64,000 nucleotides of DNA, taken from the IMG/VR virus record IMGVR_UViG_3300017963_000188, positions 294,039 through 358,038 of that record; one strand, 5' to 3'. Each line of letters begins with the position of its first letter. The stretch's first letter is position 1. The translations under genes and the position numbers were made by a program. The notes below the pieces were generated by a model. That model saw only the letters and a list, made by a program, of their open reading frames with translations. It made no database searches and was not told the origin of the DNA. Positions 35,422 to 35,565 of this stretch are shown here, piece after piece.

Positions 35422-35565
35422 AGAAGCAGCAGCGTAGAGGACGGATACTTCGCCTTCCATGCGAGAGGTCACAGGTTCGAGTCCTGTCACCCGCTCCAGT
35501 ATGCGGGTGTAGCTCAGTTGGCAGAGCACTTAACGTTTCCCGTTTTCGACTTCTTCTCTGCTTCT
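35422..35565 (+). ncRNA. Y-RNA-like unit 4 containing a complete circularly permuted tRNA-Gly(TCC)
   Basis: TTCGC-CTTCCAT-GCGAG, AGGTC, ACAGG-TTCGAGT-CCTGT, CACCCGC-T-CCA, linker GTAT, GCGGGTG-TA-GCTC-AGTTGGCA-GAGC-A. Confidence 0.88.

What the first reader, a model, noticed from the sequence alone, without database searches (positions are those of the whole stretch)
35449..35528. Unit 4 hides a complete, identity-consistent, circularly permuted tRNA-Gly(TCC)
Seen: joining 35503-35528 to 35449-35498 gives GCGGGTG TA GCTC AGTTGGCA GAGC A TTCGC CTTCCAT GCGAG AGGTC ACAGG TTCGAGT CCTGT CACCCGC T CCA. This is a canonical cloverleaf with U33, anticodon TCC, G1-C72/C2-G71/G3-C70, U73 and an encoded CCA; a 4-nt GTAT linker joins CCA to G1. 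Known: these are bacterial tRNA-Gly identity elements, and permuted tRNA genes matured through a circular intermediate are described in Cyanidioschyzon merolae and Thermofilum. Inference: the Y scaffold may act like a removable intron. Excision and ligation (RtcB is 3.3 kb downstream) plus RNase P and 3' trimming at the linker would give a functional tRNA, a possible phage/bacterial permuted-tRNA pathway.
Basis: partly seen in the sequence, partly recalled or inferred. Interest (0 to 1): 0.87.

Follow-up and report, generated by a model that had tools for sequence, protein, structure and literature searches.

The report
Phage Y RNA carrying permuted tRNA-Gly
Unit 4 is one of eight small RNAs encoded next to a phage Ro60 gene, and it does contain a complete tRNA-Gly look-alike in rearranged order, but this is a common design of Ro-associated Y RNAs (tRNA mimics) and not evidence of a hidden working tRNA gene.

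Summary
Joining 35503-35528 to 35449-35498 gives a 76-nt sequence that ARAGORN calls tRNA-Gly(TCC). It has U33, G1-C72/C2-G71/G3-C70, U73 and an encoded CCA followed by a GTAT linker.

It is not a one-off. Unit 4 is the fourth of eight tandem Y-RNA-like units directly downstream of a Ro60 (TROVE+vWA) gene. More than 90 related units from other phages, and 36 bacterial genome loci, share the plan: Ro-binding stem, closed anticodon-like hairpin with a 7-nt loop, variable loop, T arm, acceptor hairpin closed by a loop, D arm.

Covariation places the Ro-binding stem between tRNA positions 28 and 29. 77 of 88 phage loci encode Ro nearby on the same strand. Only 1 of 88 encodes RtcB.

Published work describes YrlA as a tRNA mimic that lacks an anticodon loop and a free CCA. 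It also shows that M. smegmatis YrlA is cut by RNase P and gains CCA while staying bound to Ro.

My best reading is a YrlA-class Y RNA with a full tRNA-Gly mimic, probably nicked by RNase P to expose UCCA. Excision and RtcB ligation into a free tRNA is unsupported. This is a new variant of a known kind.

The parts
33403..35085 (+). Ro60/Rsr ortholog (560 aa), the presumed protein partner of the RNA array
   Evidence: Pfam TROVE (E 2.6e-16) and vWA_Ro60 (E 3.9e-08).
35090..36083 (+). Seven tandem Y-RNA-like units. Approximate bounds: u1 35090-35167, u2 35183-35254, u3 35270-35403, u4 35422-35565, u5 35621-35763, u6 35780-35920, u7 35935-36083
   Evidence: Each unit starts with GCAGCGTAG...G.TACTTCG and closes with a unit-specific basal stem. 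Rfam YrlA RF02553 matches u4, u5 and u6 at 36-37 bits and u7 in part (30.5 bits), E from 3e-6 to 3e-4, all below the gathering score of 69.
36380..36511 (+). Eighth Y-like unit. It has a closed anticodon-like arm (CAT), a T arm, a 5-bp GAAA-closed acceptor-like hairpin and a degenerate D region
   Evidence: Sequence. An Rfam tRNA match at 36391-36463, 32.3 bits, lies inside it.
35422..35448 (+). Unit 4, 5' strand of the Ro-binding scaffold. It includes the conserved GCAGCGTAG (35429-35437) and ...GGATAC
   Evidence: Pairs with 35535-35565 in constrained and unconstrained folds. The motif is shared by all eight units.
35449..35450 (+). Junction TT (the conserved TACTT).
   Evidence: Invariant T in the family, with no compensatory change and 28 of 82 cells unpaired. 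It can still pair (T-G, T-A) in unit 4 itself.
35451..35465 (+). Anticodon-like arm: 29-31 CGC, loop CTTCCAT (anticodon TCC at 35456-35458), 39-43 GCGAG
   Evidence: Family loop statistics: U33 91%, R37 97%, A38 92%.
35466..35487 (+). Variable loop AGGTC, then T arm ACAGG TTCGAGT CCTGT
   Evidence: T-stem covariation in 90 units.
35488..35498 (+). Acceptor 3' strand CACCCGC, U73, encoded CCA
35499..35502 (+). GTAT linker that closes the acceptor hairpin. The predicted RNase P site is between 35502 and 35503
   Evidence: Sequence. The cleavage is inferred from M. smegmatis YrlA (PMC4201824).
35503..35528 (+). Acceptor 5' strand GCGGGTG, U8 A9, D arm GCTC AGTTGGCA GAGC, A26
35529..35530 (+). C27 T28, which pair with G43 A42 (35465, 35464) to complete the anticodon stem
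   Evidence: Pair 28:42 in 90 units: AU 32, GC 20, CG 19, UA 7, other 4. Watson-Crick in 88 of 93 against a shuffle mean of 27.
35531..35565 (+). Junction TAAC, then the 3' strand of the Ro-binding scaffold
38815..40128 (+). RtcB RNA ligase. This is context, not shown to act on unit 4
   Evidence: Pfam RtcB, E 4.5e-63.

Best explanation
Unit 4 (35422-35565, 144 nt) is a YrlA-class Y RNA, a small non-coding RNA that partners the phage Ro60 protein encoded just upstream. Its two ends pair into a long scaffold stem that carries the conserved GCAGCGUAG motif, the presumed Ro-binding site. The rest of the RNA is a complete tRNA-Gly(UCC) look-alike.

The cloverleaf is circularly permuted for a structural reason. 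The scaffold stem enters the anticodon stem between positions 28 and 29, and the acceptor stem is closed by the loop U73-CCA-GUAU.

Most likely fate: the RNA stays attached to Ro. Its 7-bp acceptor stem with U(-1) and U73CCA makes it an RNase P substrate. Cleavage before G1 (35503), followed by 3' trimming of GUAU, would leave a nicked two-piece RNA. The pieces would be about 77 and 63 nt, with a free CCA end, still held together by the acceptor and scaffold helices. This is what was found for M. smegmatis YrlA.

Likely function: the mimic is the effector-binding part of the Ro particle. It would be a tether or decoy for proteins that recognise tRNA-Gly, such as GlyRS, modification enzymes or anticodon nucleases. 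The phage also encodes RtcB and a second RNA ligase, so the setting is an RNA-repair and counter-defence toolkit.

Shown here: the sequence, the fold supported by covariation, the Ro linkage and the family-wide design. Inferred: Ro binding, RNase P nicking, any charging with glycine, and the decoy or tether role.
For: - Ro60 gene directly upstream on the same strand.
- Eight units share one scaffold motif.
- Rfam YrlA matches u4, u5 and u6 with E about 3e-6.
- Same architecture in more than 90 unique phage units, with covariation in the T, acceptor and anticodon stems. 95.8% of cells are paired against 67.6% in shuffles. Covariation score 0.70 against 0.17.
- The composite anticodon stem is supported by four Watson-Crick pair types at 28:42.
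- Ro is nearby on the same strand in 77 of 88 phage loci, at a median of about 950 nt.
- Anticodon loops follow tRNA rules: U33 91%; U36 goes with A37 in 59 of 59; G36 goes with G37 in 20 of 21.
- Unit 4's closest real tRNAs are tRNA-Gly.
- Other TCC-type units with U73-CCA and G1-C72/C2-G71 exist in unrelated contigs: L189/L406, L363/L391 and L365.
- Precedent for RNase P cleavage, CCA addition and Ro-bound halves of 82 and 65 nt in M. smegmatis (PMC4201824).
- A published suggestion that the YrlA tRNA-like domain competes with an anticodon nuclease (PMC7790460).
Against: - The Rfam YrlA score (37.3 bits) is well below the gathering score of 69.
- The 5' motif is GCAGCGUAG, not the published GNCGAAN0-1G.
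- No expression, Ro-binding or cleavage data exist for this RNA.
- In a nearest-neighbour energy model of full-length unit 4, neither cloverleaf is the minimum-energy fold: -55.1 unconstrained, -51.5 with the local 5-bp hairpin, -45.4 with the composite stem.
- The match between anticodon and other identity elements is not general. Asn-type (GTT) units have G73 in only 1 of 6. The body matches the anticodon's isotype in only 17 of 96 units. Unit 4's full glycine set may therefore partly reflect a recent capture of a tRNA-Gly segment and not selection for charging.
- The enrichment of U73 plus G1C2 in TCC units is modest: 4 of 9 against 1 of 17, Fisher p = 0.03, from small and related samples.
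Confidence: 0.7

Rival explanations
1. Unit 4 is a permuted tRNA gene. The Y scaffold is excised like an intron, RtcB joins the D-arm side to the anticodon-arm side, RNase P and 3' trimming open the linker, and a free decoding tRNA-Gly(UCC) results.
For: - The re-ordered sequence is a flawless cloverleaf with the glycine identity set and an encoded CCA.
- RtcB lies 3.3 kb downstream and a second RNA ligase lies in the window.
- Only one ordinary tRNA (Arg) was found in the 64-kb window.
Against: - There is no bulge-helix-bulge motif. Both cut sites lie at one three-way junction.
- No splicing-endonuclease-like gene was seen among the neighbours that were scanned.
- RtcB is linked in only 1 of 88 phage loci and 2 of 36 bacterial loci, whereas Ro is linked in 77 of 88 and 27 of 36.
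- The scaffold and junction sequences (TACTT, GCAGCGYAG) are conserved as if they function in the mature RNA.
- Sister units are not viable decoders.
- Most relatives have acceptor stems sealed by tetraloops.
Confidence: 0.05
2. A static mimic. The RNA stays a single closed 144-nt molecule. The TCCAGTAT loop is just a loop, and neither RNase P nicking nor charging occurs. The tRNA shape serves only for stability or protein docking, as proposed for S. Typhimurium YrlA.
For: - S. Typhimurium YrlA and D. radiodurans Yrn1 are not cleaved by RNase P (PMC4201824).
- Most family members have short closing loops without CCA.
- CCA in a short loop can arise by chance.
Against: - Units 4, 5 and 7 of the same array all carry a 7-bp acceptor stem, N73, CCA and a 4-5-nt linker ending in T.
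- The same arrangement recurs in unrelated contigs.
- A 7-bp acceptor stem was the feature that made M. smegmatis YrlA an RNase P substrate (PMC4201824).
Confidence: 0.2
3. An evolutionary leftover. A tRNA-Gly gene fragment recently recombined into a Y-RNA scaffold, and the glycine features are unselected remnants.
For: - Unit 4's body is closest to real tRNA-Gly.
- Bodies and anticodons match only weakly across the family, which fits modular exchange.
Against: - Independent TCC-type units keep U73-CCA and G1-C72/C2-G71 while the rest of the acceptor and T stems have diverged with compensatory changes.
- The anticodon-loop signature is maintained across the whole family.
- The array is identical in three contigs.
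Confidence: 0.05

Closest known systems
YrlA, the Y RNA-like tRNA mimic (Rfam RF02553; Chen et al. 2014, PMC4201824; Wang et al. 2018, doi 10.1101/312249)
   Same: Encoded beside Ro60 on the same strand. Both have a Ro-binding stem formed by the RNA ends, conserved T and D arms, and an acceptor-like stem closed by a loop. That is the same permuted topology.
   Different: The solved S. Typhimurium YrlA 'lacks the anticodon loop' and 'lacks a free CCA end'. Unit 4 has a closed anticodon arm with a canonical 7-nt loop, a glycine identity set and an encoded CCA. It scores 37 bits against a gathering score of 69. Its 5' motif differs. It sits in an array of eight units.
M. smegmatis YrlA (PMC4201824)
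   Same: It has a 7-bp acceptor stem, is cleaved by RNase P and carries CCA, and its 82-nt and 65-nt halves stay Ro-bound. The sizes predicted for unit 4 are 77 and 63 nt. A published primer from its 5' half parses as a closed 7-nt loop, CUUCUAA. That parse is my inference.
   Different: CCA is added after transcription there but encoded here. I could not retrieve that locus, so its full architecture is unverified.
Permuted tRNA genes of Cyanidioschyzon merolae and Thermofilum pendens (from my own knowledge)
   Same: The 3' half lies upstream of the 5' half, joined by a short linker between the acceptor 3' end and G1.
   Different: Those rely on a bulge-helix-bulge motif, a splicing endonuclease and a circular intermediate. 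Here there is no such motif, and the termini lie in a conserved protein-binding stem.
Two-piece (circularly permuted) tmRNA of alpha-proteobacteria and cyanobacteria (from my own knowledge)
   Same: A bacterial precedent for a permuted tRNA-like gene. In it, removal of the loop between CCA and the 5' end yields a two-piece RNA that can be aminoacylated and is held together by base pairing.
   Different: Unit 4 has no tag reading frame or pseudoknots. ARAGORN finds no tmRNA in the window. The partner protein here is Ro60, not SmpB.
Viral tRNA-like structures such as the TYMV TLS (as discussed in doi 10.1101/312249)
   Same: A virus-encoded tRNA mimic with an anticodon-domain mimic and a CCA end that could be charged.
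   Different: Those lie at the 3' ends of RNA genomes and are not permuted. They are not linked to Ro.

Membership tests
YrlA-class Y RNA | Encoded within a few kb of a Ro60/TROVE gene on the same strand | tested here: met
   The Ro60 gene ends at 35085 and the array starts at 35090. Family-wide, 77 of 88 loci have Ro nearby, all on the same strand.
YrlA-class Y RNA | Conserved T arm and D arm separated by an acceptor-like hairpin closed by a loop | tested here: met
   Covariation in 90 units.
YrlA-class Y RNA | Reaches the Rfam RF02553 gathering score | tested here: not met
   37.3 bits against 69, although E = 3.5e-6. The closed anticodon hairpin and the missing 7-bp helix account for the mismatches.
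YrlA-class Y RNA | GNCGAAN0-1G motif near the 5' end (the Ro contact) | tested here: inconclusive
   This array has GCAGCG(T/C)AG. Relatives have GGTGCGAAG, GGTGCGCAG or GGTGTAG. These are similar but not identical.
YrlA-class Y RNA | Bound by Ro60 in vivo | not testable with these tools
   Needs co-immunoprecipitation.
Permuted tRNA gene (C. merolae / T. pendens type) | 3' half upstream of 5' half, joined by a linker | tested here: met
Permuted tRNA gene (C. merolae / T. pendens type) | Bulge-helix-bulge motif at the processing junction | tested here: not met
   The junction strands TT and TAAC meet at one three-way junction, with no 4-bp helix between two 3-nt bulges.
Permuted tRNA gene (C. 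merolae / T. pendens type) | Circular intermediate and mature junction reads | not testable with these tools
   Needs RNA data.
Functional bacterial tRNA-Gly | Cloverleaf with conserved tertiary nucleotides and the GlyRS identity set (U73, G1-C72, C2-G71, G3-C70, C35, C36) | tested here: met
   Met only after re-ordering.
Functional bacterial tRNA-Gly | Contiguous gene recognised by tRNA finders | tested here: not met
   ARAGORN and Rfam tRNA do not call it in native order. Rfam gives only a partial match of 20.7 bits.
Functional bacterial tRNA-Gly | Aminoacylation and decoding | not testable with these tools
   Needs a GlyRS assay. A scaffold helix at 28|29 would probably clash on the ribosome (my inference).
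Two-piece tmRNA | Tag reading frame and tmRNA call | tested here: not met
   ARAGORN's tmRNA search of the window finds none.

The most novel reading that the evidence does not exclude
A widespread class of Ro-linked Y RNAs, in phages and in bacteria, is a complete circularly permuted tRNA with a real anticodon loop. A subset that includes unit 4 also carries a full synthetase identity set and an encoded CCA. After an RNase P nick, these would be Ro-tethered RNAs that can be charged, or isoacceptor-specific decoys or sensors for host anticodon nucleases. On this reading an array of eight units would be a panel of tRNA look-alikes used in phage counter-defence.
Probability: 0.3. Interest if true: 0.8.

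Novelty: new variant of a known kind. Interest (0 to 1): 0.58.

Why it matters
What the tRNA-like half of bacterial Y RNAs does has been open since 2014. The solved example lacks both an anticodon loop and a CCA end, so thinking has centred on the tRNA 'elbow'.

The analysis here shows three things:
- Many Ro-linked Y RNAs carry a covariation-supported anticodon arm whose loop obeys tRNA rules.
- Thirty different anticodons occur across the family.
- Some units, unit 4 among them, also have a matching discriminator, matching acceptor pairs and an encoded CCA.

This makes concrete hypotheses testable. Are these RNAs charged? Are they recognised by specific synthetases or modification enzymes? 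Do they soak up or report on tRNA-cutting defence nucleases?

There is also a practical gain. Phage and bacterial annotations miss these RNAs. For example, three units in Streptomyces phage Satis are unannotated, and tRNA finders cannot see them.

Tried and rejected
- **Exhaustive re-joining.** I enumerated join points in units 3-7 and ran ARAGORN on each. It calls a 'tRNA' for many arbitrary joins, so I did not use call counts as evidence.
- **M. smegmatis YrlA.** A search of genome contigs for a published 21-nt oligo gave 0 hits. The link to that RNA therefore rests on the paper's text and on my parse of the oligo.
- **Literature gaps.** The supplement of Chen 2014 and the 2020 Annual Review are not held. 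I could not check whether their 'V' stem-loop is the same hairpin.
- **Close relatives of this phage.** None were found. The viral and metagenome collections hold only identical copies (L001, L002, L361), and the next Ro is at most 41% identical. No orthologous unit 4 was available for covariation.
- **NCC-anticodon pattern on viral contigs.** It mostly returned ordinary tRNAs and added only a few units.
- **Small ORFs around the array.** Pfam gave nothing.
- **Promoter and terminator scan.** Uninformative: no terminators, and promoter-like sites at chance level.
- **Thermodynamic folding of full-length unit 4.** It does not recover the anticodon arm. I relied on covariation instead.
- **General identity consistency.** I considered that all units might match anticodon to acceptor. 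The data do not support this beyond the glycine-type units.

Full report
**Setting.** The finding lies in a tandem array of small structured RNAs directly downstream of a 560-aa ORF (33403-35085). That ORF carries the TROVE and Ro60-vWA domains and so is a Ro60/Rsr ortholog. Seven units between 35090 and 36083 begin with GCAGCGTAG...G.TACTTCG. An eighth unit (36380-36511) follows a small ORF. RtcB is at 38815-40128. The window also encodes a MoxR-vWA pair, an Rnl-type RNA ligase, an NAD-dependent DNA ligase and an SNF2 helicase. Identical copies of the array occur in contigs of 186 kb and 358 kb, so this is a jumbo phage known only from metagenomes. The closest Ro in a cultured virus is 36% identical.

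**The observation.** Joining 35503-35528 to 35449-35498 gives 76 nt that ARAGORN calls tRNA-Gly(TCC), with a 4-nt GTAT linker between CCA and G1. In native order the element is invisible to ARAGORN and to the Rfam tRNA model. The Rfam YrlA model (RF02553) matches units 4, 5 and 6 at 36-37 bits, E about 3e-6, below its gathering score of 69. ARAGORN calls are not discriminating here, because any join that keeps the T, D and acceptor arms tends to be called a tRNA. I therefore turned to comparative evidence.

**The design is a family trait.**
- A pattern search of viral contigs asked for TACTTC, a T loop, then a D arm in permuted order.
- Among 129 unique parsed units, 93 have a 3-bp hairpin with a 7-nt loop immediately 5' of the variable loop and T arm.
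- The loop has the signature of an anticodon loop: U33 in 91%, a purine at 37 in 97%, A38 in 92%.
- Position 37 follows position 36 as in real tRNAs. U36 goes with A37 in 59 of 59 units, and G36 goes with G37 in 20 of 21.
- Thirty different anticodons occur. GTT, TGT and GCT are the most frequent.
- 77 of 88 loci with such units encode a Ro homolog, always on the same strand, at a median of about 950 nt. RtcB is nearby in only 1 of 88.
- TCC-type units also occur in 36 bacterial genome loci (Micromonospora, Streptomyces, Bradyrhizobium and others). Ro is nearby in 27 of these and RtcB in 2.
- Streptomyces phage Satis has three unannotated units upstream of its annotated Ro-like gene.

**Where the scaffold enters.** The two bases that follow N26 after the D arm covary with positions 42 and 43 of the hairpin's 3' strand. 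Pair 28:42 is A-U 32, G-C 20, C-G 19, U-A 7 and other 4 in a 90-sequence alignment. In my independent parse it is Watson-Crick in 88 of 93 units, against a shuffle mean of 27 and a maximum of 43 in 5000 shuffles. The alternative uses the invariant TT of TACTT. It shows no compensatory change and leaves 28 of 82 cells unpaired. The Ro-binding stem is therefore inserted between positions 28 and 29 of an otherwise complete cloverleaf. For unit 4 the better join is 35503-35530 + 35451-35498. That join is also called tRNA-Gly(TCC) and folds to a perfect cloverleaf by minimum free energy. In unit 4 both pairings are chemically possible. The nearest-neighbour model of the full RNA prefers the local hairpin (-51.5 against -45.4, with an unconstrained minimum of -55.1).

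**How special is the glycine identity?**
- Unit 4's nearest real phage tRNAs are tRNA-Gly: the six best matches, and 16 of the best 30.
- Across the family, with the anticodon loop removed, the nearest real tRNA shares the unit's isotype in 17 of 96 cases. About 6 are expected, and the maximum in 5000 label shuffles was 16. The body and the anticodon are linked only weakly.
- Among units with a 7-bp acceptor stem followed by N73-CCA, the discriminator usually does not fit the anticodon. For example, GTT units have G73 in 1 of 6.
- TCC-type units are the exception. Unit 4, L189/L406, L363/L391 and L365 all have U73-CCA with G1-C72 and C2-G71. L363/L391 also has G3-C70. The rest of their stems have diverged.
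- The combination of U73 with G1C2 occurs in 4 of 9 TCC lineages that carry CCA, against 1 of 17 others (Fisher p = 0.03). This is suggestive and not conclusive.

**Comparison with published work.** YrlA RNAs are known tRNA mimics encoded next to Ro60 in more than 250 bacteria and in 22 phages (PMC4201824). The crystal-structure paper states that S. [quoted passage not shown] Chen et al. mention a less conserved 'V' stem-loop upstream of the T arm. This may be the same hairpin read as a variable arm, but I could not check the figures or the supplement. M. smegmatis YrlA has a 7-bp acceptor stem. It is cleaved by RNase P in vitro and in vivo and ends in CCA, and its 82-nt and 65-nt halves co-purify with Rsr (PMC4201824). 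Hughes et al. suggest that the YrlA tRNA-like domain could competitively inhibit an anticodon nuclease (PMC7790460). I found no paper that describes anticodon-loop-bearing Y RNAs or permuted tRNAs in phages.

**Mechanism.** The best-supported reading is a Ro-bound Y RNA whose effector module is a full tRNA-Gly mimic. Units 4, 5 and 7 each carry a 7-bp acceptor stem, N73, CCA and a 4-5-nt linker ending in T. This makes RNase P nicking and exposure of a CCA end plausible by analogy with M. smegmatis. Charging by GlyRS is possible for unit 4 but unproven.

- There is no bulge-helix-bulge motif.
- The family shows no linkage to RtcB.
- The junction and scaffold sequences are conserved.
- Sister units could not decode: unit 5 has a split stem and no loop, unit 6 lacks U33, unit 7 has A34, and unit 8 has a 5-bp acceptor and no D arm.

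**Verdict.** The element is a new variant of a known kind, YrlA-class Y RNA. The more interesting result is at the family level. The complete anticodon arm, its tRNA-like loop rules and the 28|29 insertion point are not described in the literature I could read.

Noticed in passing
36380-36511: An eighth Y-like unit sits apart from the array, after a small ORF (36105-36374). An Rfam tRNA match of 32.3 bits lies inside it. The listed ORF 36394-36867 overlaps this RNA, so its true start is probably further downstream.
   Followed up: partly
35621-35763 and 35935-36083: Units 5 and 7 also carry a 7-bp acceptor stem followed by A73-CCA and a TTTAT linker. Unit 5 has the split anticodon stem typical of classical YrlA (AAAGG/CCTTT). 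Unit 7 has a self-contained 5-bp anticodon-like hairpin with the unusual anticodon ATT.
   Followed up: partly
family of phage units (alignment A1; loci L016-L314): Position 37 tracks position 36 exactly as in real tRNAs: U36 with A37 in 59 of 59, G36 with G37 in 20 of 21. This suggests the loops may be substrates for t6A and m1G37 modification enzymes. The most frequent anticodons are GTT, TGT and GCT.
   Followed up: partly
L241 2700-3100 (Streptomyces phage Satis, MH576962.1): Three Y-like units lie upstream of the annotated 'Ro-like RNA binding protein' and have no annotation in the GenBank record. One has a closed anticodon-like loop, CTCTGGA.
   Followed up: partly
L407-L460 (bacterial genomes): TCC-type closed-anticodon Y units are common in Micromonospora, Streptomyces and Kitasatospora chromosomes. 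There they have a 4-nt variable loop (AGAC) and a D arm of the TCGACCAGCGGCCCAGGTC type. Acceptor stems are sealed by 2-5-nt loops.
   Followed up: no
27073-29732: A MoxR-type AAA+ ATPase (bpMoxR) and a vWA protein are encoded about 4 kb upstream of Ro60.
   Followed up: no
61030-62076: A second RNA ligase (PHA02142 OB-fold plus RNA_ligase domains) is present in addition to RtcB. An R2K-clade ATP-grasp protein lies at 59219-60043.
   Followed up: no
33210-33286: tRNA-Arg(ACG) lies 117 nt upstream of the Ro60 start codon on the same strand. No terminator-like site occurs between it and the end of the array, so tRNA, Ro60 and the Y RNAs may be one transcript.
   Followed up: no
35569-35617: The spacer between units 4 and 5 holds an extra small hairpin (TCACCT TTTTATT AGGTGA) of unknown role.
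   Followed up: no
40221-42035: A 604-aa protein with collagen-like repeats, CFSR and DUF7151 domains lies just after RtcB. It is probably a fibre or surface protein.
   Followed up: no
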